From the IMG/VR virus record IMGVR_UViG_3300021964_000012, positions 1 through 64,000 of that record: 64,000 nt of DNA, one strand, 5' to 3'. Shown here in pieces: positions 27,928 to 51,765 of this stretch. Under the pieces are notes generated by a model that made no database searches, was not told the DNA's origin, and was given only the letters and a program-made list of their open reading frames with translations. Numbering within the stretch: position 1 is the first letter of the stretch; the number at the start of each line of letters is the position of its first letter. A program made the translations under genes and the position numbers.

Positions 27928-27942
27928 GCGATAACTACATTT

Positions 27943-33639: not shown

Positions 33640-34202
33640 TATTAGTTGTCATAGCACTAGAAGAAGAATTACCAGGATCGTTACCAAGCGGATATAAAAA
33701 ATTAATCACAGGCGTAGGGAAAGTAAATGCAAGTATCGCACTTACTGCTGAGTTATGCCATAACAATCATTATACAAAAATTATAAACTACGGTTCAGCA
33801 GGCGGCAGTAAAGAAATTAAAGGCGAACTTGTAGGAGTAAGTGCAGTTATTGAACGTGATATGGATTGCACTCCTCTTGGCTTGCCATTGTATGTTTCAC
33901 CTGGCGATGAAGAACAAATGATAGTGTGTCAGACCAAACACGACAGTCTGTTTGTGTGCGGAACAGGAGACAGTTTTAGCGTGCCGCACATTAACTATCA
34001 AATATGCGAAATGGAAGCATACGCACTCGCAAAAGTTTGTCATAAATTCAATATTCCTTTTGACTGTTACAAGTACATTTCAGACAGTGACGCAGACGGT
34101 GAAGATCAAGGCCGTGAATGGGAAGCAAATGTTCACAAGGGTGCAGAACTGTTTAGAAGAACAATACTCACTGAACAAGAACAGATAGCATTTGAATGGT
34201 AG
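33636..34202 (+). CDS. mtnN: 5'-methylthioadenosine/S-adenosylhomocysteine nucleosidase
   Basis: ITGVGKVNA, INYGSAG, TGDSF, EMEAYALAKVC, KYISD motifs. Confidence 0.8.
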   Translation: MILVVIALEEELPGSLPSGYKKLITGVGKVNASIALTAELCHNNHYTKIINYGSAGGSKEIKGELVGVSAVIERDMDCTPLGLPLYVSPGDEEQMIVCQTKHDSLFVCGTGDSFSVPHINYQICEMEAYALAKVCHKFNIPFDCYKYISDSDADGEDQGREWEANVHKGAELFRRTILTEQEQIAFEW

Positions 34203-36579: not shown

Positions 36580-36682
36580 GATAAAATGGTTCAAGAATCT
36601 TATCAGCAAAATAAAACTAGAAATAAGATATCGTAAAAAATTAAAAGAACTGAGGAAAAGGGATCCTTTTATATACAAATGA
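36578..36682 (+). CDS. Small basic protein, 34 aa (MIKWFK..RYRKKLKELRKRDPFIYK)
   Basis: AAGGAG SD; ATGA overlap with metK; below the ORF-track cutoff. Confidence 0.7.
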   Translation: MIKWFKNLISKIKLEIRYRKKLKELRKRDPFIYK

Positions 36683-37779
36683 GTTATATTTTCACATCAG
36701 AGTCAGTGAGCAAAGGCCATCCTGACAAAATAGCAGACCAAATATCAGATGCATTAGTCGATGCTGGTTTGCAAGCCGGTGACGAAACAACACGTGTTGC
36801 AGTTGAAACAATGGTAACAACAAATTATGTTGTACTAGCAGGAGAAGTAAAAAACTTCAACGTCACTGATGAACAAGTTGAGCAGATTATTAGAGACAAA
36901 GTTAAAGAGATCGGCTATGAGCAAGAAGGCTTTCATTGGGATAAACTTAAAGTTGATAACAAAACAATCAACAACCAGTTGCACTCTCAAAGTTCAGACA
37001 TTGCTCTAGGTACAGATGATTTTGGTGCAGGTGATCAAGGTATTATGTTTGGATATGCTTGCAATGACAATGAAGCAATGATGCCAGCACCTATCTATTA
37101 TTCACACGAACTACTAAAAGAACTAAATGACATGCGAGCAGATGGTTATCATTTTTTGCTACCAGATGCAAAGAGTCAAGTTAGTGTTGAATATGAAGGC
37201 GGAAAAGTAAAACGTATTGATCAAGTTGTTATAAGTCATCAACACAAAGAAGGTTTTCAACATAGTGTTATAGCACCTTTCAAAACCGCAGTAGAAAAAG
37301 TACTAGGCAATTTAATAGATGACAATACAGTATTTCATTTTAATCCTACTGGCAAATTTGTTATTGGTGGACCCGATGGTGACACTGGACTTACTGGTCG
37401 TAAAATTATTGTTGATACCTATGGTGGTTTTGCTCCTCACGGTGGTGGGGCATTTAGTGGAAAAGATCCTACTAAGGTAGACCGTAGTGCGGCCTATATG
37501 GCTCGTTGGTTGGCAAAGAATGTAGTTGCAGACGATATGGCTGACTGGTGTCAAATACAATTAAGTTATGCTATTGGCGTAAAAGAACCTACCAGCATCT
37601 ATGTAGATTCAAATGGACACAACAGAAGTATACAAAAGTTTATCAGAGACAATATTGATCTTACGCCAAAAGGTATAATTGATAGATTTGATCTTTTTAA
37701 ATTTTATGAATACAGTGCAAATTGCACATACGGACACTTTGGCAACAAAGATGTTCCTTGGGAAAAGGTAGGCTGGTAA
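36679..37779 (+). CDS. metK: S-adenosylmethionine synthetase
   Basis: FTSESVSKGHPDKIADQISD, GAGDQGIMFGYA, GGGAFSGKDPTKVDRSAAY. Confidence 0.97.
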   Translation: MSYIFTSESVSKGHPDKIADQISDALVDAGLQAGDETTRVAVETMVTTNYVVLAGEVKNFNVTDEQVEQIIRDKVKEIGYEQEGFHWDKLKVDNKTINNQLHSQSSDIALGTDDFGAGDQGIMFGYACNDNEAMMPAPIYYSHELLKELNDMRADGYHFLLPDAKSQVSVEYEGGKVKRIDQVVISHQHKEGFQHSVIAPFKTAVEKVLGNLIDDNTVFHFNPTGKFVIGGPDGDTGLTGRKIIVDTYGGFAPHGGGAFSGKDPTKVDRSAAYMARWLAKNVVADDMADWCQIQLSYAIGVKEPTSIYVDSNGHNRSIQKFIRDNIDLTPKGIIDRFDLFKFYEYSANCTYGHFGNKDVPWEKVGW

Positions 37780-37889: not shown

Positions 37890-39395
37890 ATGAGAATACT
37901 AGGAGTTAGTGCAGGATTCCACGATGCCGCTCTTACTGTGGTACACAATCACAGAATACTGTTTGCAGGTCATGCTGAACGATATAGCAAAAAGAAAAAC
38001 GATCCTACTATTCCTCAAAGTCTTCAAGAACACGTTCTTAAATATGGACCTTTTGACATGATAGTCTACTATGAAAAGCCATATCTAAGACAACTGCGTA
38101 AAATTAAAAGTGGCGAAAATTGGGGAGGTGCTTGGCGTACACGTACCGAACTCGTACGTACAATTCCTTATATAATGGAAAACACCAAAGCAGAAATAAG
38201 CAGTGTTGGACATCATCTATCGCATGCGGCCGCAGGCTTTCAAACATCACCATTCGATGATGCAACAGTAGTTGTTATTGATGCAATAGGTGAGTCGGAT
38301 ACTATAAGCATATACCACGCCTACTACAATGGTGCATGTTTAGCAGGTGAACATGCTAAGGCAAATTACAAACTATTATACAAACAAACCTATCCACACA
38401 GTATTGGTATGTTCTACAGTGCAGTTACACAACGTTGTGGACTGAAGCCAATGGACGAAGAGTACATCACAATGGGCATGGCCGCATATGGGGATGCCGA
38501 CAAGGCATACAAAACATTAAAACGTGCAACTGTACAATTCGCAGATATTCCACTGTTTAAAGAAAACCTACACATAGGTATTGATGATGTTGAGTTTGCA
38601 CCTGATGTTACTGCTGAAGACATAGCTGCCGCAGGACAACAGTTATGCGAAGAAATGGTTATGGCTGTAATGCGTAGGGCAAAGGCCATTGGCACTAGTA
38701 AAAATCTAGTGTACATGGGAGGAGTTGCACTTAACTGTGTGATCAATCGTCGATTGGGTGAACTGTTTAACAAAATATGGATAATGCCCAACCCAGGAGA
38801 TGCAGGAAGCAGTTTGGGAGCCGCGGCCTACACATATGGTAGAGACATAAACTTTACAACACCATACTTGGGCTCAAATATAGCAGGTGAATATCCAGTG
38901 GATGAACTGTTAAAAGAATTAGAAACAAATCAAATTGTTGGAGTCGCAAATGGACGTGCAGAATTTGGTCCAAGAGCGTTAGGTAACAGAAGTTTACTAG
39001 CCGATCCGCGTGGACGAAATATCAAGGATCGAGTGAATGAGATAAAACGTAGACAAAAGTTTAGACCGTTTGCTCCTGTGATACTTGAAGAACATGTGCA
39101 TGACTATTTTGTAATGCCTCTTTATCAACCCACAAGTCGCTACATGCAGGTAGTAGCACGTTGCACAAAGCCAGATAAGTTTCCTGCTATTATACACGTA
39201 GATGGCACATCAAGAGTACAAACAGTTCCTGACAATGATAGTGGTATAAGACGGTTGTTGAGTGCGTGGTATAAAAAAACCGGTTGTCCTATGTTGTTGA
39301 ATACCAGTTTAAACATAAGAGGCGAGCCAATGGTTGATGATAGATTTGATGCTAATCGCTTTCAAAAAGAGTATGGAGTAACTGTATGCAGTTAG
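37890..39395 (+). CDS. O-carbamoyltransferase, NodU/CmcH family
   Basis: GFHDAA..ERYSKKKND, HHLSHAAAGF, GGVALNC, PGDAGSSLG, RAEFGPRALGNRS, FRPFAP, LLNTSLN. Confidence 0.92.
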   Translation: MRILGVSAGFHDAALTVVHNHRILFAGHAERYSKKKNDPTIPQSLQEHVLKYGPFDMIVYYEKPYLRQLRKIKSGENWGGAWRTRTELVRTIPYIMENTKAEISSVGHHLSHAAAGFQTSPFDDATVVVIDAIGESDTISIYHAYYNGACLAGEHAKANYKLLYKQTYPHSIGMFYSAVTQRCGLKPMDEEYITMGMAAYGDADKAYKTLKRATVQFADIPLFKENLHIGIDDVEFAPDVTAEDIAAAGQQLCEEMVMAVMRRAKAIGTSKNLVYMGGVALNCVINRRLGELFNKIWIMPNPGDAGSSLGAAAYTYGRDINFTTPYLGSNIAGEYPVDELLKELETNQIVGVANGRAEFGPRALGNRSLLADPRGRNIKDRVNEIKRRQKFRPFAPVILEEHVHDYFVMPLYQPTSRYMQVVARCTKPDKFPAIIHVDGTSRVQTVPDNDSGIRRLLSAWYKKTGCPMLLNTSLNIRGEPMVDDRFDANRFQKEYGVTVCS

Positions 39396-40228
39396 AACAC
39401 ACACGAACAAGATATCATCGAAACTTTGCCTATTGGAAAAATGACGAAGTTATTGGAAAAAATCTTAGAGAGTATGGCGAATATCAGCAAAAAGAAATTG
39501 ATCTATTAGTTGGTTTATTAAACAGTGTAAATAGCAAACAAAAAGTGGTTTGGGACATTGGTGCCAACATAGGAGTTCATACTATGGCATTTTCTAAACA
39601 TAGTACTTTTGTTTGCAGTTGGGAAGCAAATCCACAAAACTTCAAACTACTACAAATGAATACACAAGGAAAACTTGCTCCAAATGTAAAAGTACACAAT
39701 GTTGCTATTAGCAATGGTAAAAAAGACACAATACAAATACAAGACTTTGATCAGTCTAAGTCTAGTAACAAAGGTGAATTATCAATTGTAGAAAAAGGTG
39801 GAGTAGAAATTTCAGCAAGAAGCATCGACAGTTATATGATGAATTATCCTCTTCCTAGTTTGATAAAAATTGATGTAGAAGGTCATGAACTTGAAGTACT
39901 GCAAGGTGCACTTGTAATGCTAAAAACAGTAAAACCAATATTGTATTTTGAAACTGCTGATAAAGTGAGTTATGCAGAACATATAACATTTCTTAAAGAT
40001 CTTGAATATCGCATGTGGTGGTTTGCATGTCCTAATTTTAATAAAAATAATTATAATAAAAATGACAATAATACCTGGGGTAGAAGTGTTATCTGTAGTA
40101 TACTCGCAATACACAAGGATGTGGTTGGATTAAATACTATAGAATTGCAAGAAGTAATTGATGCCGACGATCATTGGTTAAAGATGGATTGGGATTACGA
40201 TACAGGACTTACAAGAGCAATAGAATGA
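39386..40228 (+). CDS. FkbM-family SAM-dependent methyltransferase
   Basis: WDIGANIGVHT, LIKIDVEGHELEVLQGA. Confidence 0.88.
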   Translation: MQLEHTRTRYHRNFAYWKNDEVIGKNLREYGEYQQKEIDLLVGLLNSVNSKQKVVWDIGANIGVHTMAFSKHSTFVCSWEANPQNFKLLQMNTQGKLAPNVKVHNVAISNGKKDTIQIQDFDQSKSSNKGELSIVEKGGVEISARSIDSYMMNYPLPSLIKIDVEGHELEVLQGALVMLKTVKPILYFETADKVSYAEHITFLKDLEYRMWWFACPNFNKNNYNKNDNNTWGRSVICSILAIHKDVVGLNTIELQEVIDADDHWLKMDWDYDTGLTRAIE

Positions 40229-40539
40229 CCAAAGAAAACGATTTAAGACAACGTGTAATAGAATCACTTCAAACAGTATTTGATCCTGAGATGCCCAGTA
40301 TAAGTGTTTACGATTTAGGTTTAATCTATAAGATAGAGATCAAAGGTGACTGGGTTGGCATAGAACATACACTAACTAGTATGGCATGTCCTTTTGCAGA
40401 TCAAATTTGTGCCGATATAGAACATGCAGTTATTAGTACACCTGGCGTGCGTGCTATTGATAGACAATTGGTATTTGAACCTATTTTTACAATAGAAATG
40501 GTTCCTGAAGAAACCAAACTAATAATGGGCTGGTACTAA
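40225..40539 (+). CDS. SufT/DUF59-type Fe-S cluster assembly protein
   Basis: LQTVFDPEM..VYDLGLIY..TLTSMACP; start reassigned to 40225 (ATGA overlap). Confidence 0.85.
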   Translation: MTKENDLRQRVIESLQTVFDPEMPSISVYDLGLIYKIEIKGDWVGIEHTLTSMACPFADQICADIEHAVISTPGVRAIDRQLVFEPIFTIEMVPEETKLIMGWY

Positions 40540-40655
40540 TGGATACAAGAATGATTTTTGCCTTACTTGCATTGCCGTTATTATCATACATTGGTTACTA
40601 TGTTGGTTTAGAACTTTGGTGCTATGTTTACGGGATTATCTATCCAATTGTATAA
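40539..40655 (+). CDS. Small membrane protein, 38 aa
   Basis: MDTRMIFALLALPLLSYIGYYVGLELWCYVYGIIYPIV; TAATG coupling; overlaps the convergent gene. Confidence 0.45.
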   Translation: MDTRMIFALLALPLLSYIGYYVGLELWCYVYGIIYPIV

Positions 40656-41297
40656 TTCTTCCGCTATCTTTTCATGACCAAGTTCACTTGGATGACCATC
40701 ACCTGAAATAAAGTTGTCATTTGTATAGCTTATTTGTGTAAGGTTTCCAATGGTACCGGGGACTAATTCTCCTGATTTTCCATTGGCAGCAAGTAGCTCC
40801 ATTGCATTTTCTTTAGCATTTTTGTAAAAACGCGATTTGTCAATTTCTGGCACCAGTGTCGGATGCTGCCAACCAAGCAGATAGGTGTCTCGAATATGGT
40901 ATTTGGTGCAAAGATTTTGTAAAATATACAAGGTGTTGTTAAGGTGCCATTCACCTAGTTTATTTGTGTATACCAATCTATAATAGAGTTTATCTCTATC
41001 GTTTTGTGGATGCATTTCGATTGCCTTACCACTTTCATCAAGTGCTATTTGTCTTTCTAAAGCAGTGATAAAAAATATTGCACTATAGGTATGGTCTTTT
41101 TGATAGTCATTCTCAAGGAATTTTCTTAATTGAAATAGCATATGATGTACACTGCTTGAACCTTGACTAAGATCAATTAATTCGCAATTGAGTCTTCTTG
41201 CTAGTATACCTGCATATATTTTTTCTGGCGGATATAGTCCTCCAATTGCCTGACCAGTGGCCCAACTGTCGCCAAAGTTTAGTAGATAGTGTGTCAA
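40608..41297 (-). CDS. SGNH/GDSL-like hydrolase or acyl-transfer protein
   Basis: FGDSW near the N-terminus and DGHPSELGH..IA near the C-terminus. Confidence 0.6.
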   Translation of the reverse strand: MTHYLLNFGDSWATGQAIGGLYPPEKIYAGILARRLNCELIDLSQGSSSVHHMLFQLRKFLENDYQKDHTYSAIFFITALERQIALDESGKAIEMHPQNDRDKLYYRLVYTNKLGEWHLNNTLYILQNLCTKYHIRDTYLLGWQHPTLVPEIDKSRFYKNAKENAMELLAANGKSGELVPGTIGNLTQISYTNDNFISGDGHPSELGHEKIAEELYNWIDNPVNIAPKF

Positions 41298-42325
41298 AGA
41301 TAGGTTTCCAATTCACCTTTACGTCTAATGTCTTGTGTACAACAACTAACGCCACCGTCCCAAAAGTAGCTGTGTCTAAGTTCTGAAATAATTGGGTTTA
41401 TACGATGCTTTTCACAGAAATCAAATACCTGTTTATTGTAGGCACTGAATATAACATTCTCTTCGTCTAGTACTAAGCAGTTTACATCAAATACAGTATC
41501 GCTTACATACCCAACCCATTCTTTGAGATAGGTATCAACAAATTTTGTAAACTCAGGTGTAGGAGTTTGTCCTTGTACATACCAAGCACCATTGAAGTTT
41601 TCTTCTTTGAATTTACCTACTGCCATTGCATGCCATATTGTGCTAGATTCAAGTTTACTAACTTCCCAACCTGGAAAGTCTGAGTCTAGGTCCAATTGGT
41701 CGTCCCATTTACTACTCAATATCACACCAGGCTTTAGAATTGCAAATACTGCATCGCCATGTCCATCTGTGATTGCTTCATGAAAACGATATCGACTGTC
41801 TAAACAATTTTCTTGTATCCAACGACTTTGATCTGGTTTAAGATAATCACTATTATCAAAGAATATATCGGTCCCACAACGTACTATACAACTTGCACTT
41901 GCACCGGCTACAACACAATCTGGATCATGTGCTAAAAACTCGCCATGAGGATTAATCACTGCATCACCATATTCAGCACAAATATCATCTAATTCAAGTA
42001 CTCTGAGAACACGTAACAGTTTGTCACCTAAGGTGATTTGCCAATCTCTTGGCGTTAAAGGCGGCAACGGTGCACCATTGTCTTTTATATTGAAATATTG
42101 AAAATCTTCTTTGCTAATCAGACCAGGACGTTTAACAAGTGCACCATATTGCTCGCAGGTCTTTTGTAAATTATCTAAGTCTTCATTTGTTTCATCTAAT
42201 ATCTGCCCTAATTGATCTCGTACTGTAGAGTTGTTAATAAAATCAAAATAATCTGGAGTGTATGCTCTACCTACTATAACTTCTTCTAGAGGTTGCCAAC
42301 TGGTGTAACTATTTACTTTGGACAT
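41294..42325 (-). CDS. Amidinotransferase (AGAT/StrB1-like)
   Basis: VNSYTSWQPLEEVIVG, PRD, GHGD, C-terminal GGVSCCTQDIRR. Confidence 0.85.
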   Translation of the reverse strand: MSKVNSYTSWQPLEEVIVGRAYTPDYFDFINNSTVRDQLGQILDETNEDLDNLQKTCEQYGALVKRPGLISKEDFQYFNIKDNGAPLPPLTPRDWQITLGDKLLRVLRVLELDDICAEYGDAVINPHGEFLAHDPDCVVAGASASCIVRCGTDIFFDNSDYLKPDQSRWIQENCLDSRYRFHEAITDGHGDAVFAILKPGVILSSKWDDQLDLDSDFPGWEVSKLESSTIWHAMAVGKFKEENFNGAWYVQGQTPTPEFTKFVDTYLKEWVGYVSDTVFDVNCLVLDEENVIFSAYNKQVFDFCEKHRINPIISELRHSYFWDGGVSCCTQDIRRKGELETYL

Positions 42326-43200
42326 ATTAATATATCATTGCTTTCTTTGTTTAAGAACAATTGTTGATTATGTATGAGATCATCTTTGCAATCCACATAC
42401 ATACTGTGCGTCTTTTTTGATTTTGCAATTCTACACATTTCTGTACATACTGCCTTCCAACGTTCAGTTGCATCTTCAATCTCATCATATGAATGATCAA
42501 CTACATGATCAAATGTTTTATATCCCATTTCACGTAATTGAGTTACTGACCCCATTGCCCCTGCTAAGACAAATGGTTGACAGTTTTTAATTGCTCTAAA
42601 AACTTTTTCAGTTAATCTGACAGGACCGTTGAGATCACTTTCTATAACAAAATTAAAGTAAGCATCACTGTGATGCAGTCCTACTGTGTATTTCATGTCT
42701 GCATGTTCGTCTGGTGTCAATAAGTCACAATGAAAAGGAGCCATTTTTAAAAAAAATTCTGTATGATGTTTTAGACTTCCTAAGTTGCTAGTATCAATTG
42801 GGTTTATATCATCTTCCACAGTGATTCGATTGTTATATCCAAAGTATCCTTTCTTGTGTAAACCTTTACTCCATAATCTTGCCATTGTGTATGCACGCCA
42901 TTGTCTGTGTGTGCGGACAAGTGCAGTAAAATTCTTGCTCCGTTCTTGAGTATGAAATACAGTAGGCATACTTCTATTACGATGGCGGTAAAGCAGTTCA
43001 TCGCTACACGTATAGGTAATACCTGCGAGATCACGACTTTTAGTGGATTTTTCGATAAAATGTAAATTTTCTGCCTTAAAACCTGCTCGTACAGCATCAG
43101 CACTAACATTTTTTACTAATAAATTTTCTGGTAATAAAAAATAAAGATTTGTAATGTTTTTAAACATAATAGTTTCAGCTAGATCTGTTATCAAATCCAT
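42313..43200 (-). CDS. TEK-motif putative glycosyltransferase 3
   Basis: YFNFVIES..LTEKVFRAI..PFV..LREMGYKTF..DHSYD. Confidence 0.55.
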   Translation of the reverse strand: MDLITDLAETIMFKNITNLYFLLPENLLVKNVSADAVRAGFKAENLHFIEKSTKSRDLAGITYTCSDELLYRHRNRSMPTVFHTQERSKNFTALVRTHRQWRAYTMARLWSKGLHKKGYFGYNNRITVEDDINPIDTSNLGSLKHHTEFFLKMAPFHCDLLTPDEHADMKYTVGLHHSDAYFNFVIESDLNGPVRLTEKVFRAIKNCQPFVLAGAMGSVTQLREMGYKTFDHVVDHSYDEIEDATERWKAVCTEMCRIAKSKKTHSMYVDCKDDLIHNQQLFLNKESNDILICPK

Positions 43201-44249
43201 TTTGCCATCATTCCTTGTAGTTCATTCCATAAGAGTTTTTCAAAATCTGCACTGTAAAACCAATTGTAGTTGTGCTCTACAATGCTATTTACTGCGGTTT
43301 GCAAGGTGGTCTTTTCTTTTTGACTCATATTATTAATGTCTTGTAACAGTTTGCCTATCTCATATGTGCGAACTGAATCATCTGCTTCATCGTATGATTC
43401 GTCCCAAAATTCACTAAATGTTTTAAAACCATATCTACGCAAATACTCTAAGCTACCTTTGCAACTCTGTATTATAAAAGGTTGTTGCATTACAATTGGT
43501 TTGAAAGATTTTTCTGTTAGATGATTTTTACGTCCTCGATATACTGTTTCAGTAACTATGTGTATCAGACTATTGTTTGCTTGTTCCCATAAATCAATTT
43601 GATGGCTCTTTGCCGCATAACCTGACCCGTTATCTATCATTAAGGGTAGTCGAACCTGAGGACAATCTAAATCATACTTTACACATAATAATTGTAAACT
43701 TTGTCCTTCGTATGGACATACGTCTGGAAATGATATTAAATTTTTATCAAGTAAATCTCGCCCAACAAACTGTTGAAGCATTTCAATACGATGTTTACGT
43801 TCTCCACCAATTATGTTGTTAGGACAAAGAAAAGTATTATAAGGCTTGCGTTCTGAAAATTTTTGTGCTATACTAGTTCTATTATAACCTCGATACCAAT
43901 CAAGTGCAGCCCAGCCATGAAAGAAATAGTAGTCCATTTCAAGACCATAAGTATCTTTGGCCCAAGAAGCATCTTCGCTGTTGTATTCGCTCGTAACAAG
44001 TCTACATTTGTTTGTATGCAAATAAAGTGGTTTGAACTGGTCAATAAATGGTATAAATCTATTACGATAAATTGGTTCTTGATCCCACATTATAATTCTA
44101 TTATTAGGAACGCCATGTACTGCCGGCTTGTTACAAATATCCTTAAAATCTGTACTACCAAATGGGTCAAACCAATGGAGTCCTGTACTGGGTATGTTTT
44201 TAACAACTGGTACAAAAACACCATCGTAAATTTCATCAATTCTAATCAT
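43191..44249 (-). CDS. TEK-motif putative glycosyltransferase 4
   Basis: IHIVTET..LTEKSFKPI..PFII..LRRYGFKTF..WDESYD. Confidence 0.55.
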   Translation of the reverse strand: MIRIDEIYDGVFVPVVKNIPSTGLHWFDPFGSTDFKDICNKPAVHGVPNNRIIMWDQEPIYRNRFIPFIDQFKPLYLHTNKCRLVTSEYNSEDASWAKDTYGLEMDYYFFHGWAALDWYRGYNRTSIAQKFSERKPYNTFLCPNNIIGGERKHRIEMLQQFVGRDLLDKNLISFPDVCPYEGQSLQLLCVKYDLDCPQVRLPLMIDNGSGYAAKSHQIDLWEQANNSLIHIVTETVYRGRKNHLTEKSFKPIVMQQPFIIQSCKGSLEYLRRYGFKTFSEFWDESYDEADDSVRTYEIGKLLQDINNMSQKEKTTLQTAVNSIVEHNYNWFYSADFEKLLWNELQGMMAKWI

Positions 44250-46236
44250 GTTTGATAAATGTTACTCATACAATAAAGATTCTCTTGCACAGTGCAAGAC
44301 TAGGTACTTATGGGTACTAAATAAGCACTGTGATTATTCTAATTTTGACTTTGCCTGGGAGCCGGCTCCCTGGGAAAAAGATTTTAGACATGCTTTTGGA
44401 TCACAGTGGCAAAAGGATTCTGGTACATATCTTGTTCCAAAACATGGGTATACCGAAACAAAATACAATCAAGAACAAACAGTGACACGATTACCTACAC
44501 AGGATAATTGGGATAGCACAGAATTTGAATTTGACTATTCATGGCACCCTGATCCAACAGAGCCAGATTTTATCTATCAATTTGGCACACAATGGCAAAA
44601 AACAGGCGGCCCAAGGTACGTGATTCCTGGTGCTACAAACATAAAATATGTAGATAGTCCTCGCATTAATAAAACATCAGTTGATTTACATTGGGTTGTA
44701 CCTGAAGCAAATATCGAAAACTTTGATTATACATGGCATCCTGACAACACTGAGAAACCTTTCATTTATCAATTTGGCACACAACATCAAAAAACAGGTG
44801 GGCCACGATATGAGGTACCAGGAGCAATCGAAGTCAAGTATGTAGGAGATATTACCACAAAAGTAAAAGCTGTTGCTTCAGGCGTAGTGCTTATTAAACA
44901 TCTTAACAAAGACTTTGTTTATCAAGGTACAATTCCTATTTTAAGTACTACTAGATTTATATCAAACTATCTTGACACACTAATACGTGTTTTGAAAAAG
45001 CTAAATGGTCATGAGTATGTTTGGATAATAAGCGACCTATGCGATTATGAAAACTTTGACTTTAGTTGGCATCCTGAACTATGGCAACACAGCATGTTAC
45101 ATGTATTTCCTAGTAACGAACAAGAGTTTGGTGATACGTTTTTTATTAATGTAGAAAGTTTTTTGGAAAATGCAAAAAACATCAAATTGTTGGAATGGTA
45201 CAATCCTTTAAATTTTGTTCCTTATACAGTAAAACGTAAGGATTGTCCTCAGATAAAGTATGATTCAGACAGTGTAGTTGATGCAGTCTGGAGTCATAAT
45301 TTTCAAGAGCCAGTGGTACAATTTTACAGGTATAAACCAGAGAAACAAGTTACCATTAGTTTATGGCAAGAAAGACTCAGAACAGTTGTTCCTTTAGCAA
45401 AAGGAAGTGAGTGTGTGTTAGTACCTAAAGATGCAAAAAATTATATTAATACACAAGTATATGATTATAAATGGATAGATAAAAAACACAAACCTAAACA
45501 AGCTAGACCACTTGATATTGTTTTTATTAGCAATGATGAAAGCAATGCCGAAAAAAATTGGGAACATCTAATTAAAGTACATAAAGGTCAAAATCGTATT
45601 GTCAGAGTAGATGGAGTAAAAGGCAGAGCAGAAGCATATCGTGCTAGTTTAGAAGCAAGTAACACCGACTGGGCATTTTGTGTGTTCGCTAAACTTGAAG
45701 TGAACGCAGATTTTGATTGGACGTGGCAACCAGATAGGTTACAACAAGCAAAGCACTATATATTTCATGCTAAAAATCCTGTAAATGGATTGGTATATGG
45801 ACACATGGCAATGATTGCATATAATAAAAAACTTGTTGCAGTGAACCAATCTCAAGGGTTAGACTTTACACTTGATCAAGAACATGAAGTTGTGCCACTT
45901 CTCAGTGGTATTGCTCGTTATGCTGATGACCCATGGATTGCCTGGCGTAGTGCGTTTCGTGAATGTTTAAAGCTCAAAAATAGTTTGCCCAACATAGAAT
46001 CCAACTACCGTCTTAAACAGTGGTTAAAAGCAGATACAACGTCTGCTGTAGCTGGTTGGAGTGCAATTGGTGCACAAGATGCAGTTGATTACTATGACGC
46101 AGTTGAAGGCAATTTTGCAAAACTGCGTCTAACATACGAATGGGATTGGCTGGCAGAATACCTATTCAAGCAACACAATCTAACACCTGATCAATTATGT
46201 ACTCAACTTCAAGATCAGTCAATTCAGGGTATATAG
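44248..46236 (+). CDS. Multidomain protein: WHP repeats plus C-terminal GT-A-like domain
   Basis: 64-aa tandem repeat FDY.WHPD..FIYQFGTQ.QKTGGPRY; LDIVFISNDE..RVDGVKG..AY. Confidence 0.7.
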   Translation: MFDKCYSYNKDSLAQCKTRYLWVLNKHCDYSNFDFAWEPAPWEKDFRHAFGSQWQKDSGTYLVPKHGYTETKYNQEQTVTRLPTQDNWDSTEFEFDYSWHPDPTEPDFIYQFGTQWQKTGGPRYVIPGATNIKYVDSPRINKTSVDLHWVVPEANIENFDYTWHPDNTEKPFIYQFGTQHQKTGGPRYEVPGAIEVKYVGDITTKVKAVASGVVLIKHLNKDFVYQGTIPILSTTRFISNYLDTLIRVLKKLNGHEYVWIISDLCDYENFDFSWHPELWQHSMLHVFPSNEQEFGDTFFINVESFLENAKNIKLLEWYNPLNFVPYTVKRKDCPQIKYDSDSVVDAVWSHNFQEPVVQFYRYKPEKQVTISLWQERLRTVVPLAKGSECVLVPKDAKNYINTQVYDYKWIDKKHKPKQARPLDIVFISNDESNAEKNWEHLIKVHKGQNRIVRVDGVKGRAEAYRASLEASNTDWAFCVFAKLEVNADFDWTWQPDRLQQAKHYIFHAKNPVNGLVYGHMAMIAYNKKLVAVNQSQGLDFTLDQEHEVVPLLSGIARYADDPWIAWRSAFRECLKLKNSLPNIESNYRLKQWLKADTTSAVAGWSAIGAQDAVDYYDAVEGNFAKLRLTYEWDWLAEYLFKQHNLTPDQLCTQLQDQSIQGI

Positions 46237-47260
46237 GTAAACTAAGCACACGTCGTGAAAGGCTTGTACTGCTGGCAAGCAATGGTTTTACACCATGAAA
46301 TGATCCTATTTCGTTAATACCATATTCATAGTGTACTTTGGAATCTATACCTGCTTGTTGTAAATACTCTTTTATTTTATTTCTATCTGTATTGCAATCA
46401 ATGACAAATTTATGAAAACAATGTTCCTGTAAATTAGAACTATCAATTAAGCATCTAATATCTGACTTTTCGTTTAATCTTTCTATCCAATAAAGACCAA
46501 TTGTTTGTCTGCGTTCTTGCCATTCGTCTATGTATTTGGTTTTAACAAGCATTGTTGCACAGTCTATTTCACTCATACGACTGTTTGTTCCACCAGTAAC
46601 ATGGGCCGACCCATTGGCTCTGTACCATCTTACAAATCTATCTATACTTACAGTGTTGGTAAGCACGGCTCCGCCGTTGGCATAGTTTGCAAGATTCTTT
46701 GTAGGATCAAAACTTATTGCACTGGTGGAGATTCTTTTACAATCCCAACTGAGCCAATGCTGAGCCGCATCTTCTACCAAGATCCAATCGTGTTCTGCAA
46801 CCAAATCTCTAAAACGTTGTGTTTGATAATTCTTTAGACTGTTGCCATACAATCCTACCAAACACACTGCCATTGTGTTGTAGTGATGTGGTTGTATACT
46901 GTCAATATCCAGCATGCCATATGAGTCAGTATCAGCTACCACAACTTCCCATCCTGCTGAAATCCATGAGTTTGCAGTTGCACGATAGGTTAAGTTCGGA
47001 ACGATAACCTGTGGCTTATTGAGATTAAGTTGTTTGTAATGATAACGTGCTATTGCTTCAAGTGCAACTGTACCTGAACCAATTGTAATGGCATGATCAA
47101 CGTTGTTTCGTTTTGCTAACCATGATTCAAATTCTTGTGTGTAGTTGCCATTCATCAGTTGGCCACTACGCAATACTATATCAATGGTATCGAGAACTTC
47201 TGATCTAAGGTTATTATACTGTTTTTTTAGTCCAGTAAACGGAATTTCTAAGCCACTCAT
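46166..47260 (-). CDS. DegT/DnrJ/EryC1/StrS PLP-dependent sugar aminotransferase
   Basis: SGTVAL, EDAAQ, SFDPTKNL (PLP Lys), GGA, NSRMSE, LSLPIYPEL. Confidence 0.92.
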   Translation of the reverse strand: MSGLEIPFTGLKKQYNNLRSEVLDTIDIVLRSGQLMNGNYTQEFESWLAKRNNVDHAITIGSGTVALEAIARYHYKQLNLNKPQVIVPNLTYRATANSWISAGWEVVVADTDSYGMLDIDSIQPHHYNTMAVCLVGLYGNSLKNYQTQRFRDLVAEHDWILVEDAAQHWLSWDCKRISTSAISFDPTKNLANYANGGAVLTNTVSIDRFVRWYRANGSAHVTGGTNSRMSEIDCATMLVKTKYIDEWQERRQTIGLYWIERLNEKSDIRCLIDSSNLQEHCFHKFVIDCNTDRNKIKEYLQQAGIDSKVHYEYGINEIGSFHGVKPLLASSTSLSRRVLSLPIYPELTDLEVEYIIDQVLDCVA

Positions 47261-48251
47261 GGTATAGTTTGATGCCTTCTTCTAAGTTGATTTTTGGATC
47301 AAAGTTCAAATCCGTTTTTGCTTTATCAATGTTTAATGTGCCTCTACTAGGCATATTTGCATCTCGATCATTGATCTCAACTGTGCCTTTGCCTACAATT
47401 TTAACAACTGCGTCTGCGGCTTCTTTTATTGTTTTAGCATCACCTTTAGTTAGATGATAGATGCCAGTTTTACCCTTCAGCAATGCTAAAATCATTCCTT
47501 CGGCTAGATCATCAACATAGGTAAAATCCAATCTCTCATCTTCACCATTTACTGATAGTGTTCTATCTGCTTTAGCATTTAGAATAAATTTTCCTATAAC
47601 TCTATCACAGTTATCCAATGGGCCATAAACTGCACTTGGTCGAACTGTTACATAATCAAGGTTGTGTTGTTTATTAAAGTTTTCTACCAATTTTTCACCA
47701 GCATGTTTCCATATAGCATAACTGCCTTTTGGATCTGGAGTGTGTGTTTCATCAGCAGGAAACGAAAAGTCGCCAAGTACCATGCTTGAACTTACATACA
47801 ATAACCTTTTGATGTTGTGTCTTGCACTGTTTTCCAATATGTTAGCAAGTCCCTGACACATTGTATGTGCAGCTTCTACTGGGTTTTCACTTGCCAACTT
47901 TTCATTTGGAAAACTAGCAAGATGTACAACATAGTCTGGTTTCAATTTTAAGAAAATATCATTTACCAATTCAATTTCAGCAACATCAATTTTGTGAATC
48001 ATTGTGTCATCATCAAATTTTGCCAGTCTTTCATTGTATAGATATTCTAATTCACTTTTGTCTAATAGTCCGTAAGTGGTTAGTGCATCAATTACTTCGA
48101 CTCGATGATTTTGTTTTTGCAACTGTTCAACAACCTTGTGCCCAATGAAGCCAAGACCTCCTGTCACAAGTATTCTTTTTTGTTCAACCTTTACTGCGGT
48201 TTGTTTAGGTTGTCTTGTGATTGATTTTTTCTTTTTTCTATTCTTTGCCAT
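47214..48251 (-). CDS. NAD-dependent epimerase/dehydratase with basic N-terminal extension
   Basis: VTGGLGFIG, YAIWK, VYGP, LDFTYVDD. Confidence 0.9.
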   Translation of the reverse strand: MAKNRKKKKSITRQPKQTAVKVEQKRILVTGGLGFIGHKVVEQLQKQNHRVEVIDALTTYGLLDKSELEYLYNERLAKFDDDTMIHKIDVAEIELVNDIFLKLKPDYVVHLASFPNEKLASENPVEAAHTMCQGLANILENSARHNIKRLLYVSSSMVLGDFSFPADETHTPDPKGSYAIWKHAGEKLVENFNKQHNLDYVTVRPSAVYGPLDNCDRVIGKFILNAKADRTLSVNGEDERLDFTYVDDLAEGMILALLKGKTGIYHLTKGDAKTIKEAADAVVKIVGKGTVEINDRDANMPSRGTLNIDKAKTDLNFDPKINLEEGIKLYHEWLRNSVYWTKKTV

Positions 48252-48921
48252 GAGCATACGCCTTTATGTTAGGAAATATTTTTGCTATTGCATCAGCACA
48301 GGCATGAGCAATTTGCATATGCTCTAGTTGTGTGCCGTTAGCACCACGCAGATCAATATAGTGTATCCAACTACGTATTGTACCATTCATGTAAAGTCTT
48401 GTTTTTGTTAATCCTTCAGGAAGAATCTTTCTAGCTTGTTCTTTTGCTATGTTGTTTTCAATTGCCCATTCGTATGCTTCTTTGCATGCTTCTATTACTT
48501 TGTCCTGCATTTCAGTCCACTCTTGGTGCAACATAACATTTTCAGTTTGAATACTGTTCTGTCTGTTTTTTGTATCCTGCAATCTGCATTCAGCATACTC
48601 AAACATGTCTCCCATTTCTTGTGGATTCGCATAACGTTGTGAAAATTCTTGAAAACTAAAACTACGATGACGTACTATTTGATGTGCAATATCACGTGTT
48701 GTATCTACTTCTAAGCAGGCACTGGCCATTTCAAATGGTGACCAATGTTTGTGTTTTACCAAATAGTTTAGTAGACGTTCGTGTGTTTCTGTGTTGATTT
48801 GATGATTTGGATTTGAAACTTTTGCACAATAGGCAATTAAATCCTGTATATCTAATAACCCGCCTTCTTCGTAGGTTTCGAATTCACTTGCTTTACTATA
48901 TGATACTAATCTTACGTTCAT
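48238..48921 (-). CDS. thyX: Flavin-dependent thymidylate synthase
   Basis: HWSPFE, RHRSFSFQEFSQRY, KEQARKILP, RSWIHYIDLR. Confidence 0.95.
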   Translation of the reverse strand: MNVRLVSYSKASEFETYEEGGLLDIQDLIAYCAKVSNPNHQINTETHERLLNYLVKHKHWSPFEMASACLEVDTTRDIAHQIVRHRSFSFQEFSQRYANPQEMGDMFEYAECRLQDTKNRQNSIQTENVMLHQEWTEMQDKVIEACKEAYEWAIENNIAKEQARKILPEGLTKTRLYMNGTIRSWIHYIDLRGANGTQLEHMQIAHACADAIAKIFPNIKAYAHGKE

Positions 48922-50279: not shown

Positions 50280-50453
50280 TTATTTTTCCATAAAGCAGGC
50301 AGTTTCTGGATCATTCCATTCTAATTCATACTTGCTACGTATAAACCAATCTCTTGGACATGCCCATTCTGGTGCATCACTATAGTCATGATTGGTTACT
50401 TCTTCTAAACAAGTGATTTCTTCGAGATCTAAATGGTCAGGATCATGAATCAT
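50280..50453 (-). CDS. Small acidic protein, 57 aa
   Basis: MIHDPDHLDLEEI..; the longer 131-aa call overlaps the VWA gene, so the start was moved to 50453. Confidence 0.5.
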   Translation of the reverse strand: MIHDPDHLDLEEITCLEEVTNHDYSDAPEWACPRDWFIRSKYELEWNDPETACFMEK

Positions 50454-51705: not shown

Positions 51706-51735
51706 GTGCTACTCCTAATTTCTAACTGTATATAC

Positions 51736-51765
51736 ATTGTAACACATATTGTGAAAGTGTCAACC
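51736..51765 (-). promoter_or_regulatory. Early sigma70-type promoter GGTTGACA-16-TACAAT (TGn extended)
   Basis: -35 at 51758-51763, -10 at 51736-51741, followed by GTATATACAGTTAGAAA and AGGAG. Confidence 0.8.

What the first reader, a model, noticed from the sequence alone, without database searches (positions are those of the whole stretch)
37890..47260. Enzyme set mirrors aminoglycoside/aminocyclitol biosynthetic logic
Seen together: DegT aminotransferase, amidinotransferase, NodU/CmcH carbamoyltransferase, twitch-type rSAM enzymes and GTs. Known: streptidine uses StsC (DegT) then StrB1 (amidinotransferase); tobramycin uses TobZ (NodU/CmcH); butirosin uses BtrN (twitch rSAM). Inference: the phage may make guanidino- and carbamoyl-aminosugars, giving a cationic glycan or even a diffusible small molecule. 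Family-level similarity only.
Basis: inference. Interest (0 to 1): 0.7.

Follow-up and report, generated by a model that had tools for sequence, protein, structure and literature searches.

The report
Phage sugar-tailoring and glycosylation gene island
A 328-kb marine jumbo phage carries a roughly 27-kb block of soluble enzymes that most likely tailors nucleotide sugars and builds a decorated glycan. It includes a phage-only amidinotransferase family, but nothing shows that it makes an aminoglycoside-type cyclitol.

Summary
DegT (46166-47260), a NodU/CmcH carbamoyltransferase (37890-39395), a distant but solid amidinotransferase (41294-42325) and glycosyltransferases (42313-46236) lie inside the stated coordinates. 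The five twitch radical-SAM genes lie upstream (26473-35506).

The window is the start of a complete 328-kb jumbo myophage that is common in marine and estuarine metagenomes. The island continues from the baseplate/fibre genes. It also holds MetK, a nucleosidase, a SufT-like protein, an FkbM methyltransferase, an SGNH-like protein and two sugar SDRs.

The aminocyclitol analogy is not supported:
- The genome has no DHQ-synthase-type or inositol-phosphate-synthase-type cyclitol enzyme.
- No island protein has a membrane segment.
- The twitch domain is N-terminal and shows no similarity to BtrN.
- DegT is lost in two sub-lineages that keep the amidinotransferase.

The best reading is a cytoplasmic nucleotide-sugar tailoring and glycosyltransfer system with a macromolecular acceptor, possibly the adjacent fibres. 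A guanidino-sugar is possible but unshown. The amidinotransferase family is essentially phage-restricted, has 2-4 paralogues per genome and lacks the third residue of the AGAT catalytic triad. I rate this a new variant of known phage glycan islands.

The parts
20855..21766 (+). 303-aa protein, 33% Ser+Thr, lying between the fibre genes and the island; a candidate glycosylation acceptor (context only)
   Evidence: Composition; no family hit; follows the 518-aa fibre-like gene 19149-20705
24037..24966 (+). GT-A-like protein, homologous to the C-terminal domain of the 662-aa protein
   Evidence: blastp 1e-8 to residues 422-609 of 44248-46236; aligned in A3; weak Glycos_transf_2 hit, E 0.14
25500..26510 (+). 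Paralogue of the new GT-B-like family
   Evidence: blastp 3e-16 to 43191-44249
26473..27927 (+). N-terminal-twitch radical SAM enzyme 1
   Evidence: NF033640 299 bits, cut-off 170; CxxxCxxC motif and N-terminal Cys cluster
27943..28776 (+). Extended SDR, GDP-fucose-synthase-like (epimerase/reductase type)
   Evidence: PF01370 2e-31; NCBIfam best hit GDP-L-fucose synthase, below cut-off
28761..29819 (+). Paralogue of the GT-B-like family
   Evidence: blastp 1e-10 to 25500-26510 and 3e-7 to 43191-44249
29728..33639 (+). Three tandem N-terminal-twitch radical SAM genes (29728-31170, 31154-32437, 32434-33639)
   Evidence: NF033640 297, 405 and 342 bits
33636..34202 (+). MTA/SAH (5'-deoxyadenosine) nucleosidase-like protein
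   Evidence: PNP_UDP_1 2e-13; nucleosidase PRK05634 9e-23, below cut-off
34196..35506 (+). N-terminal-twitch radical SAM enzyme 5
   Evidence: NF033640 283 bits
35496..36554 (+). Conserved 352-aa protein of unknown fold; part of the clade's core set
   Evidence: No hit in Pfam, NCBIfam, PHROGs or the Atlas; present in all full-length related loci
36679..37779 (+). S-adenosylmethionine synthetase (MetK)
   Evidence: All three MetK Pfam domains, 4e-31 to 6e-58
37890..39395 (+). NodU/CmcH-type O-carbamoyltransferase
39386..40228 (+). FkbM-family methyltransferase; a strain-variable cassette
   Evidence: TIGR01444 8e-25; PF05050; absent in many relatives; exact deletion joint 39395->40232 in a metatranscriptome contig
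40174..40539 (+). SufT/PaaD-like Fe-S cluster assembly protein
   Evidence: PF01883 1e-15; TIGR02945 2e-25, below cut-off
40608..41297 (-). SGNH/GDSL-like hydrolase, by motifs only; a strain-variable cassette
   Evidence: GDS and DGHP motifs read in the sequence; Lipase_GDSL E 0.06; found only in the identical contigs L014/L015; deletion joint 40626->41296
41294..42325 (-). Amidinotransferase-family (pentein) enzyme of a phage-restricted subfamily
   Evidence: Cys328, His189, Asp94 and Asp191 conserved; Ser143 at the AGAT Asp254 position
42313..43200 (-). Short member of the GT-B-like family (295 aa; orthologues are about 390-400 aa)
43191..44249 (-). GT-B-fold glycosyltransferase of a new phage family
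   Evidence: Model pLDDT 91.7; Foldseek and VIA matches to GT-B enzymes
44248..46236 (+). 662-aa protein: N-terminal domain, two W-x-P-x-P...FG-x-Q-W repeats, then central and C-terminal GT-A-like domains
   Evidence: Alignment A3, repeat number 0-8 among orthologues; model pLDDT 70, C-terminal part 80-90; GT-A matches at E 1e-4 to 1e-2
46166..47260 (-). DegT/DnrJ/EryC1 PLP-dependent sugar aminotransferase
   Evidence: PF01041 1e-53; PDB best hits 7b0d, DesV, QdtB and WbpE; S-F-x-x-x-K lysine motif visible
47214..48257 (-). Extended SDR acting on NDP-sugars, epimerase/oxidoreductase type; not a canonical 4,6-dehydratase
   Evidence: PF01370 4e-45; PDB best hit UDP-glucose 4-epimerase; S-S-S-M-V where dehydratases have T-D-E, plus Y-x-x-x-K

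Best explanation
The finding is the distal third of a roughly 27-kb island (about 20.9-48.3 kb) of a marine jumbo myophage. I read the island as three layers.

1. Support layer. MetK makes SAM. A Pfs-like nucleosidase removes 5'-deoxyadenosine, SAH and MTA. A SufT-like protein helps Fe-S cluster maturation. Together these would support five N-terminal-twitch radical SAM enzymes and a SAM-dependent methyltransferase. This role is inferred from gene content.

2. Tailoring layer. An epimerase-type SDR and a DegT aminotransferase would make an amino sugar from a host NDP-sugar. A second, fucose-synthase-like SDR, the FkbM methyltransferase, the NodU-type carbamoyltransferase, the SGNH-like esterase, the radical SAM enzymes and the amidinotransferase would then decorate sugars. 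The families are shown; substrates and order are inferred.

3. Assembly layer. Four members of a new GT-B family and two GT-A-like proteins would transfer these sugars to an acceptor.

All proteins are soluble, so assembly is cytoplasmic. The acceptor is most likely a macromolecule. My first choice is the virion fibre or baseplate proteins encoded directly upstream on the same strand. My second choice is a host envelope glycan intermediate.

The amidinotransferase probably moves the amidino group of arginine, through a Cys328 thiouronium intermediate, onto an amine made in this pathway. Its acceptor is unknown. The system is a glycan-decoration island, not an aminocyclitol or aminoglycoside pathway.
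For: - Family assignments.
- GT-B fold at pLDDT 91.7 with GT-B matches only. Viral structural relatives include fusions of this fold to a UDP-glucose/GDP-mannose dehydrogenase domain and to an FkbM domain.
- GT-A-like matches for the 662-aa protein.
- Conserved core across 33 contigs: radical SAM genes 3-5, the unknown at 35496, the carbamoyltransferase, the amidinotransferase, the GT-B genes and the 662-aa protein.
- Tailoring genes come and go as cassettes. FkbM, SGNH, MetK, Pfs, SufT and an extra DegT plus radical SAM pair vary between relatives. This fits glycan diversification.
- The amidinotransferase is the most conserved gene of its block (61-84% identity), whereas the glycosyltransferases fall to 30-40%.
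- In a lineage at 33-35% identity the amidinotransferase again neighbours a DegT, an NDP-sugar dehydrogenase-family gene, GT-B-like genes and a second pentein.
- No membrane segment in any island protein.
- The island follows gp25, a 1135-aa baseplate-module gene, a 4490-aa protein, a fibre gene and a 33% Ser/Thr protein on the same strand. The 31-36 kb spacing between the 1135-aa gene and the amidinotransferase holds in six relatives, down to 61% identity.
- No cyclitol-forming enzyme in the genome.
- The literature already proposes comparable sugar and carbamoyltransferase clusters in cyanophages (PMC7824862) and notes T4-like marine genomes rich in radical SAM and PaaD genes (PMC5332604).
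Against: - No substrate, product or acceptor is shown.
- No canonical 4,6-dehydratase was found. The SDR lacks the T-D-E motif, and the only other SDR checked is a GalE.
- No strong sugar nucleotidyltransferase was found; there is one weak hit far away.
- DegT is absent from five related loci that keep the amidinotransferase.
- More distant amidinotransferase homologues often sit among replication genes or in radical-SAM-dense regions without sugar genes.
- Proximity to fibre genes may only reflect conserved genome architecture.
- The best solved structural matches of the GT-B protein are the two T4 DNA glucosyltransferases.
Confidence: 0.5

Rival explanations
1. Host-surface remodelling. The island makes modified NDP-sugars and glycosyltransferases that alter the host's O-antigen or capsule during infection, to block superinfection or to stop released virions sticking to lysed-cell debris. 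This has been proposed for the LPS clusters of P-SSM2-type cyanophages.
For: Same enzyme classes as the cyanophage LPS clusters (PMC7824862). The only cultured-phage homologue of the amidinotransferase lies next to KdsA, KdsB and glycosyltransferases in a Synechococcus phage. Peripheral O-antigen glycosyltransferases are often soluble. Cassette-like variation of tailoring genes.
Against: The island has no initiating phosphoglycosyltransferase, flippase, polymerase or ligase. The only polytopic proteins I looked at in the genome are TctA-like. The host is unknown. The island is joined to the structural module.
Confidence: 0.2
2. DNA hypermodification. The GT-B family glycosylates modified bases in phage DNA, and the other enzymes tailor the attached sugar, as a defence against restriction.
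For: The best solved structural matches of the GT-B model are T4 beta- and alpha-glucosyltransferase (Z 12.1 and 10.7, against about 10.6 for a fucosyltransferase). The phage has a T4-type capsid. ThyX lies next to the sugar genes.
Against: No ThyA-type dCMP/dUMP hydroxymethylase and no C5 DNA methylase. No TET/JBP hit, but the control for that search was silent. No DpdA/TGT or QueC. The Z margin over ordinary GT-B enzymes is small and identity is 9-11%. Swiss-Prot model matches are generic GT-B enzymes. At least seven paralogues would be unusual for DNA glycosyltransferases.
Confidence: 0.08
3. The enzymes build a free, diffusible, cationic aminoglycoside-like small molecule carrying guanidino and carbamoyl groups.
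For: DegT, an amidinotransferase, a TobZ-family carbamoyltransferase and radical SAM enzymes co-occur. The best PDB name for the DegT is a 'glutamine-scyllo-inositol transaminase' entry. A secondary-metabolite reading has been suggested for cyanophage carbamoyltransferase clusters (PMC7824862).
Against: No cyclitol synthase. No exporter or membrane protein in the island. The radical SAM family is unrelated in architecture to BtrN. DegT is not always co-inherited. Six glycosyltransferase-like genes suggest an oligo- or polysaccharide.
Confidence: 0.07
4. The amidinotransferase is not a sugar enzyme. It, and its 2-3 paralogues, act on arginine-derived small molecules or on protein or peptide amines, together with the radical SAM enzymes. 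It is linked to the sugar genes only by position.
For: There are 2-4 paralogues per genome. Homologues occur beside replication genes, beside a large S8-peptidase protein, in radical-SAM-dense regions without sugar genes (L079, L081, L087), and next to an arginyl-tRNA-protein-transferase-like gene. DegT is dispensable in some relatives.
Against: Adjacency to GT-B-like genes recurs in four separate lineages and adjacency to DegT in two. In the window it overlaps the start of one GT-B gene and lies in one co-directional run with both.
Confidence: 0.15

Closest known systems
Cyanophage 'LPS' and sugar/carbamoyltransferase gene clusters (P-SSM2, S-SSM6a type), as analysed in PMC7824862
   Same: Large lytic phages carrying blocks of SDR epimerase/dehydratases, several glycosyltransferases, methyltransferases and NodU/CmcH carbamoyltransferases, with gene content varying between relatives. 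Predicted to decorate polysaccharide or to make a metabolite.
   Different: Here there is also an amidinotransferase, five N-terminal-twitch radical SAM enzymes with MetK, Pfs and SufT support, and a new GT-B family. There is no sugar kinase and no clear nucleotidyltransferase. The island is attached to the baseplate/fibre module. The phage has no psbA, and its capsid protein groups with the PA5oct and Vibrio 2.275.O jumbo phages.
Arginine amidinotransferases AGAT, StrB1, SxtG, HsvA (pentein fold)
   Same: Full-length profile similarity at 1e-30 to 1e-33. The catalytic Cys and His, both guanidino-binding Asp residues and the C-terminal G-G-x-x-C-x-T-x-D-x-R-R-x-G motif are conserved.
   Different: Below Pfam and NCBIfam detection. 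The AGAT Asp254 position is Ser143 and is not conserved in the family (Asp in 9 of 50). The family has its own invariant motifs (R-H-x-x-F-W-D before the Cys; E-T-x-F-D-V-N). It is found only in phage contigs and is multi-copy per genome.
Streptomycin/bluensomycin and 2-deoxystreptamine aminoglycoside pathways (StsC, StrB1, TobZ, BtrN)
   Same: The same four enzyme superfamilies are present: DegT, amidinotransferase, a TobZ-family carbamoyltransferase and twitch-type radical SAM.
   Different: No cyclitol-forming enzyme. The radical SAM twitch domain is N-terminal and no similarity to BtrN is detectable. No exporter or resistance gene. Many glycosyltransferases. The DegT/amidinotransferase pairing is not obligate.
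T4-like marine environmental viral genomes rich in radical SAM and PaaD genes (PMC5332604)
   Same: T4-type marine phages with up to 12 radical SAM genes plus a PaaD/SufT-like Fe-S protein. This genome has 11 NF033640 paralogues plus three other radical SAM genes.
   Different: That paper treated them as Fe-S-related auxiliary genes. Here five are embedded in a sugar island with SAM supply and by-product removal genes.
Virus-encoded virion glycosylation (mycobacteriophage capsid/tail glycans; Mimivirus fibril and chlorovirus capsid glycans)
   Same: Soluble virus-encoded glycosyltransferases and sugar-tailoring enzymes beside structural genes. Structural matches include Mimivirus R699 and PBCV-1 A64R.
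   Different: No evidence here that any virion protein is glycosylated. This is an analogy from gene position only. The mycobacteriophage and Mimivirus facts are cited from PMC12619734 and from my own knowledge.

Membership tests
Arginine amidinotransferase family (AGAT/StrB1/SxtG/HsvA) | Significant full-length sequence similarity to solved members, and not to pentein hydrolases | tested here: met
   phmmer 6e-13 to 8e-7. Profile of 50 sequences 1.7e-33 to 1.9e-30. Only amidinotransferases appear among all PDB hits at E<=1e-3.
Arginine amidinotransferase family (AGAT/StrB1/SxtG/HsvA) | Catalytic cysteine (AGAT Cys407) and histidine (His303) | tested here: met
   Cys328 aligns with Cys407 and is invariant in 50/50. 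His189 aligns with His303 and is present in 49/50.
Arginine amidinotransferase family (AGAT/StrB1/SxtG/HsvA) | Two aspartates that hold the guanidino group (AGAT Asp170, Asp305) | tested here: met
   Asp94 (P-R-D motif) and Asp191 (H-x-D motif) are invariant. The residue roles are from published AGAT structural work, recalled from memory.
Arginine amidinotransferase family (AGAT/StrB1/SxtG/HsvA) | Third triad residue (AGAT Asp254) | tested here: not met
   The aligned position is Ser143. Across the family it is Asp in 9/50, Ser in 8 and Asn in 6. The alignment in this segment is of lower confidence.
Arginine amidinotransferase family (AGAT/StrB1/SxtG/HsvA) | Amidino transfer from arginine to an amine acceptor | not testable with these tools
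   Needs an enzyme assay.
Aminoglycoside/aminocyclitol biosynthetic cluster | Cyclitol-forming enzyme (2-deoxy-scyllo-inosose synthase of the DHQ-synthase family, or myo-inositol-1-phosphate synthase) | tested here: not met
   PF01761 and PF01658 give no hit in the complete 328-kb genome, and the control genomes responded.
Aminoglycoside/aminocyclitol biosynthetic cluster | Co-inheritance of aminotransferase, amidinotransferase and carbamoyltransferase | tested here: inconclusive
   The carbamoyltransferase accompanies the amidinotransferase in all 33 clade loci. DegT does so in 25 of 30 informative loci and is absent in L029, L030, L033, L037 and L038. Outside the clade, DegT is a neighbour in one further lineage (L051, L052) and the carbamoyltransferase in one locus (L084).
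Aminoglycoside/aminocyclitol biosynthetic cluster | BtrN-type radical SAM enzyme (C-terminal twitch domain) | tested here: not met
   The SPASM/twitch match is at residues 9-98, before the radical SAM core. No PDB sequence hit at E<0.7.
Aminoglycoside/aminocyclitol biosynthetic cluster | Export or self-resistance function | tested here: not met
   No predicted membrane segment in any protein between 20.8 and 49.9 kb (a simple hydropathy scan). Resistance enzymes were not specifically searched.
NodU/CmcH (TobZ-type) O-carbamoyltransferase | Both the Kae1-like N-terminal and the YrdC-like C-terminal domain, with similarity to characterised members | tested here: met
   PF02543 and PF16861 both above cut-off. 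PDB hits 1.6e-46 (novobiocin carbamoyltransferase), GdmN and TobZ 8e-33. The first ~100 residues are not covered by the Pfam N-terminal match but are covered by PHROG 1601.
DegT/DnrJ/EryC1 sugar aminotransferase | Full-length family match and the PLP-binding lysine motif | tested here: met
   PF01041 residues 19-359 against 4-359 of 360. An S-F-D-P-T-K motif is present (the motif's role is from knowledge of the family). Regiospecificity is undetermined; the nearest solved relatives are mostly C-3 aminotransferases.
NDP-hexose 4,6-dehydratase (RmlB/Gmd) | Catalytic Thr-Asp-Glu motif plus Y-x-x-x-K | tested here: not met
   47214-48257 has S-S-S-M-V at that position, with Y-A-I-W-K present. NCBIfam dTDP-glucose dehydratase scores 135 bits against a cut-off of 365. 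The best PDB match is a UDP-glucose 4-epimerase. The motif rule is recalled from the RmlB/GalE literature.
N-terminal-twitch radical SAM (NCBIfam NF033640) | Score above the curated cut-off, a CxxxCxxC motif and an N-terminal auxiliary Cys cluster | tested here: met
   283-405 bits against a cut-off of 170 for five island proteins and 11 proteins genome-wide. Invariant Cys33, Cys94, Cys97, Cys148, Cys152 and Cys155.
GT-B glycosyltransferase fold | Two Rossmann-like domains that match solved GT-B enzymes over most of the chain | tested here: met
   pLDDT 91.7. Foldseek probability 0.95-1.0 to GT-B enzymes. VIA Z 9-12 over 240-280 residues.
T4 DNA glucosyltransferases (BGT/AGT) | Specific relationship to BGT/AGT, and a pathway that puts a hydroxymethyl base in the DNA | tested here: inconclusive
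   They are the top structural matches, but only 1.5 Z units above a fucosyltransferase and at 9-11% identity. No ThyA-type hydroxymethylase or C5 methylase. No TET hit either, but the control for that search was silent, so it is uninformative.

The most novel reading that the evidence does not exclude
A widespread clade of marine jumbo phages makes a guanidinylated and carbamoylated amino-sugar glycan. It uses a phage-only amidinotransferase family together with a large set of N-terminal-twitch radical SAM enzymes, and displays the glycan on its tail fibres or virion. As far as I know, a guanidino sugar installed by a pentein amidinotransferase has not been described in any glycan. The same enzyme set could alternatively release a free cationic pseudo-oligosaccharide.
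Probability: 0.15. Interest if true: 0.85.

Novelty: new variant of a known kind. Interest (0 to 1): 0.58.

Why it matters
This phage and its relatives are abundant. Amidinotransferase relatives were found as 1,712 clusters at 90% identity, many from Tara Oceans and estuary data. The radical SAM orthologues gave more than 7,500 such clusters.

If the island decorates virions or host surfaces with unusual cationic or carbamoylated sugars, it would affect host recognition, defence evasion and particle stickiness for a common group of ocean viruses. It would also add new enzymes to glycobiology: a phage-only amidinotransferase family, a new GT-B family, and an uncharacterised radical SAM family that has its own SAM supply and clean-up genes.

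Even on the conservative reading, the island gives a concrete set of soluble enzymes whose chemistry can be tested in vitro without culturing the host.

Tried and rejected
- Direct nucleotide match to known phages: none.
- Pfam, NCBIfam and PHROG searches for the five unknown genes between 40.6 and 46.2 kb: nothing usable.
- ESM Atlas feature searches: only viral unnamed clusters, a sub-threshold GT10 lead for 43191-44249, and no usable hit for 35496-36554.
- PDB sequence searches for a radical SAM gene and for 22076-22906 and 22890-23669: nothing. My impression that the last two look GT8-like is unverified and I have dropped it.
- I first labelled 47214-48257 a 4,6-dehydratase. I withdrew that label after the motif check.
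- DNA-modification routes (ThyA-type hydroxymethylase, TET/JBP, C5 methylase, TGT/DpdA, QueC): none found. The TET search had a silent control and is uninformative.
- T4 late-promoter motif TATAAATA as a timing clue: 0 hits against 7.3 expected, so it could not be used.
- Search for bacterial homes of the amidinotransferase family, to borrow context: only mis-binned phage contigs.
- Search with a radical SAM protein for named or bacterial relatives: only close phage orthologues were listed.
- Literature searches combining these enzyme names with phages: no paper on this combination. The PDB entry 7b0d could not be traced to a paper.
- Metatranscriptome contigs cover parts of the region at 90-99% identity, but DNA carry-over cannot be excluded, so I do not claim expression.

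Full report
WHAT THE WINDOW IS

The window is bases 1-64000 of a complete 328,292-bp virus record with direct terminal repeats. The genome has a T4-type major capsid protein (PF07068, E 4.5e-100). That protein is 61-65% identical to the capsid proteins of jumbo myophages such as Vibrio phage 2.275.O, Pseudomonas PA5oct and large Escherichia and Sinorhizobium phages. The genome has no psbA, and no cultured phage matches the region at nucleotide level. Nearly the same DNA is present in many estuarine and marine metagenomes.

CHECK OF THE OBSERVATION

Inside 37890-47260 I confirmed the following genes:
- A NodU/CmcH carbamoyltransferase with both domains. Its PDB relatives are a novobiocin carbamoyltransferase, GdmN and TobZ.
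- An FkbM methyltransferase and a SufT/PaaD-like Fe-S protein.
- An SGNH-like protein, identified by motifs only.
- The amidinotransferase at 41294-42325.
- Two paralogous genes of unknown family (42313-43200 and 43191-44249).
- A 662-aa repeat protein.
- A full-length DegT aminotransferase.

A profile of 50 diverse relatives raises this to 1.7e-33 through 1.9e-30, and no pentein hydrolase appears.

The twitch radical SAM genes are real but lie upstream, at 26473-35506. All five score well above the NF033640 cut-off. Their auxiliary-cluster domain is N-terminal.

The glycosyltransferases needed structure prediction:
- 43191-44249 folds with pLDDT 91.7 into a GT-B fold.
- The 662-aa protein folds less well (pLDDT 70; C-terminal part 80-90). 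It matches GT-A enzymes, including multi-GT-A proteins such as LH3, K4CP and Mimivirus R699. Its C-terminal domain is homologous to 24037-24966.

THE REAL EXTENT OF THE FEATURE

The finding is the distal part of an island running from about 20.9 to 48.3 kb. On the + strand the order is:
1. gp25 baseplate wedge, a 1135-aa protein, a 4490-aa protein with FG-GAP and weak CBM5/12 matches, a 518-aa fibre-like protein and a 303-aa protein that is 33% Ser+Thr.
2. A GT-A-like gene, a GT-B-like gene, a radical SAM gene, a fucose-synthase-like SDR, a GT-B-like gene and three radical SAM genes.
3. A Pfs-like nucleosidase, a radical SAM gene, a conserved unknown, MetK, the carbamoyltransferase, FkbM and the SufT-like gene.

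Converging on it from the - strand are the SGNH-like gene, the amidinotransferase, two GT-B genes, DegT and an NDP-sugar SDR, followed by ThyX. The 662-aa gene is inverted between GT-B and DegT.

I first called the SDR at 47214-48257 a 4,6-dehydratase and withdrew that. It has S-S-S-M-V where dehydratases have T-D-E, and its best solved relative is a UDP-glucose 4-epimerase.

No island protein has a predicted membrane segment.

Genome-wide there are 11 NF033640 paralogues plus three other radical SAM genes. There are also at least seven members of the GT-B-like family, a second full-length amidinotransferase paralogue (207640-208878, 31% identity), one or two weaker ones, and a true GalE.

CO-INHERITANCE

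A scan of viral contigs gave 56 loci. In the 33 loci whose amidinotransferase is 61-100% identical, the core set is always present where the flank reaches. That set is radical SAM genes 3-5, the unknown at 35496, the carbamoyltransferase, the amidinotransferase, the GT-B genes and the 662-aa protein.

Other genes vary:
- MetK, Pfs, SufT, FkbM and SGNH come and go. Close relatives carry an extra DegT plus radical SAM pair.
- Two metatranscriptome contigs carry exact deletions of the FkbM gene and of the SGNH gene, so these behave as cassettes.
- DegT is missing from five informative loci in two sub-lineages that keep the amidinotransferase and carbamoyltransferase. In one of them the SDR is also replaced by an unrelated 289-aa ORF.

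The amidinotransferase is the best-conserved gene of its block, while the glycosyltransferases diverge to 30-40% identity. The distance from the 1135-aa baseplate-module gene to the amidinotransferase (31-36 kb) is kept in six relatives.

Further away, the picture is mixed:
- In a lineage with 33-35% identical amidinotransferases, the neighbours are a UDP-glucose/GDP-mannose-dehydrogenase-family gene, a second pentein, a DegT, GT-B-like genes and in one case a radical SAM gene. This is independent support for a sugar context.
- Other homologues lie beside replication genes as a tandem pair, beside a giant S8-peptidase protein, or in radical-SAM-dense regions (L079, L081, L087).
- Cyanophage-type homologues (28-30%) share no neighbours with the window. 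The one cultured example sits next to KdsA, KdsB and glycosyltransferases.
- Because these genomes hold about one radical SAM gene per 30 kb, a single neighbouring radical SAM gene is close to the chance expectation. Only the dense clusters are informative.

THE AMIDINOTRANSFERASE FAMILY

A search of 1.84 billion representative proteins found 680 clusters at E<=1e-3. All those I looked up are unnamed metagenomic proteins.

Among one genome for each of 185,579 prokaryotic species, only 15 loci matched. All are MAG contigs, and the larger ones share many genes, some at 60-80% identity, with this phage, so they are mis-binned phage DNA. The family therefore looks phage-restricted.

Asp94, Asp191, Asn282, Gly325, Cys328 and Arg335 are invariant, and His189 is nearly so. 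These map onto AGAT Asp170, Asp305, Cys407 and His303. The position of AGAT Asp254 is Ser143 here and varies across the family. So one defining feature of the classical triad is not met, although the alignment there is weaker. Whether the enzyme transfers or hydrolyses, and onto what, cannot be decided by sequence.

WHY THE AMINOCYCLITOL READING FAILS

- The genome has no DHQ-synthase-family gene and no inositol-1-phosphate-synthase-family gene; control genomes responded in both searches.
- The radical SAM family is architecturally different from BtrN and has no solved relative by sequence.
- There is no transporter in the island.
- There are six glycosyltransferase-like genes.
- DegT's nearest solved relatives are sugar aminotransferases: DesV, QdtB, WbpE and NtdA. 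One entry is named glutamine-scyllo-inositol transaminase, and I could not trace it to a paper.

From memory only, the same gene set resembles Nod-factor and fucosylated-glycan decoration at least as well as it resembles streptomycin. The parallels are NodU/NolO carbamoylation, FkbM-family NoeI methylation and a fucose-synthase-type SDR.

MECHANISM I COMMIT TO

A support layer (MetK, nucleosidase, SufT-like protein) sustains radical SAM and methyl chemistry. A tailoring layer makes and decorates amino and deoxy sugars on nucleotide carriers. Soluble GT-B and GT-A enzymes then assemble a glycan in the cytoplasm on a macromolecular acceptor.

My probabilities are:
- About 0.7 that this is nucleotide-sugar tailoring plus glycosyltransfer.
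- About 0.3 that the acceptor is a virion fibre or baseplate protein.
- About 0.2 that it is a host envelope glycan.
- About 0.08 that it is DNA. The T4 DNA glucosyltransferases are the top structural matches, but no pathway for a hydroxymethyl base, and no deazaguanine system, was found.
- About 0.07 that the product is a free small molecule.

KNOWN CONTEXT AND NOVELTY

Phage sugar clusters with carbamoyltransferases have been described and interpreted as polysaccharide decoration or secondary metabolism (PMC7824862). T4-like marine genomes with up to 12 radical SAM genes and PaaD have been noted (PMC5332604). I found no paper that describes an amidinotransferase in such a cluster, the N-terminal-twitch radical SAM expansion with its own SAM cycle genes, or this GT-B family.

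I therefore rate the feature a new variant of a known kind, of moderate to good interest.

Noticed in passing
window 4933-18405 (+): A single 4490-aa ORF directly after the gp25 baseplate gene and a 1135-aa baseplate-module gene. It has FG-GAP repeats and a weak CBM5/12 match, and is probably a giant fibre or baseplate-attached protein.
   Followed up: partly
G000 whole genome (e.g. 83703-84848, 139043-140734, 159762-161315, 254029-255468, 261580-262782, 317147-318691): Eleven paralogues of the N-terminal-twitch radical SAM family NF033640 in one phage genome, plus three other radical SAM genes. Four of the paralogues carry an extra N-terminal domain of about 100-150 aa.
   Followed up: partly
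G000 311831-313085; L075, L083, L086: A trio of small genes lies next to amidinotransferase-2-type homologues in other phage contigs: a 169-aa unknown, a 143-aa protein matching the arginyl-tRNA-protein transferase C-terminal domain (E 9e-6), and a 105-aa DUF6614 protein. Both the transferase-like protein and the amidinotransferase point to arginine chemistry.
   Followed up: partly
window 39395-40232 and 40626-41296: Metatranscriptome contigs of related strains carry exact deletions of the FkbM gene and of the SGNH-like gene. These two tailoring genes are therefore presence/absence cassettes in natural populations.
   Followed up: partly
window 38300-44249, run X15: One public run labelled as an organism rather than a metagenome holds the whole stretch at about 3x depth and 98-99% identity. 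This may be a clue to the host or to a culture that carries the phage. The name is coded, so I could not pursue it.
   Followed up: no
window 44248-46236 and orthologues (alignment A3): The number of W-x-P-x-P...Y-I-Y-x-F-G-x-Q-W repeats in the 662-aa protein ranges from none to about eight among orthologues (proteins of 521 to 1073 aa). The GT-A-like C-terminal half stays conserved.
   Followed up: partly
L074-L088: All 15 hits for the amidinotransferase family in the species-representative genome collection are MAG contigs. They are binned as Saccharibacteria, Bdellovibrio-like, Legionella, Haliscomenobacter, Chloroflexota, Pacearchaeota and others. The larger ones share many genes with this phage, some at 60-80% identity, so they are probably mis-binned phage DNA.
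   Followed up: yes
whole window: The T4 late-promoter octamer TATAAATA is absent from all 64 kb on both strands, against 7.3 expected from shuffles.
   Followed up: no
window 44248/44249 and 46166-46236: The start codons of the GT-B gene (- strand) and the 662-aa gene (+ strand) overlap divergently by 2 nt. The 662-aa gene's 3' end overlaps the 3' end of DegT by 71 nt. So this one inverted gene has no intergenic space on either side.
   Followed up: no
window 60928-66600 (continues into G000): A second small group of related genes: another radical SAM gene (60928-61917), a 363-aa unknown, three tRNA genes (Thr, Trp, Arg at 61903-63340) and two more GT-B-like paralogues (63890-64924, 65641-66600).
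   Followed up: partly
G000 94014-94985; 74217-75686; 162614-164053: A bona fide UDP-glucose 4-epimerase (E 4e-65 to solved GalE enzymes). Of two polytopic proteins, 162614-164053 is homologous to a gene carrying a Pfam TctA match (TctA-like transporter), and 74217-75686 resembles it more weakly.
   Followed up: partly
window 50443-53957 (-): A DUF2201 metallopeptidase/VWA protein and a MoxR-like AAA ATPase lie just downstream of the island. The first of these is conserved at the same position in relatives.
   Followed up: no
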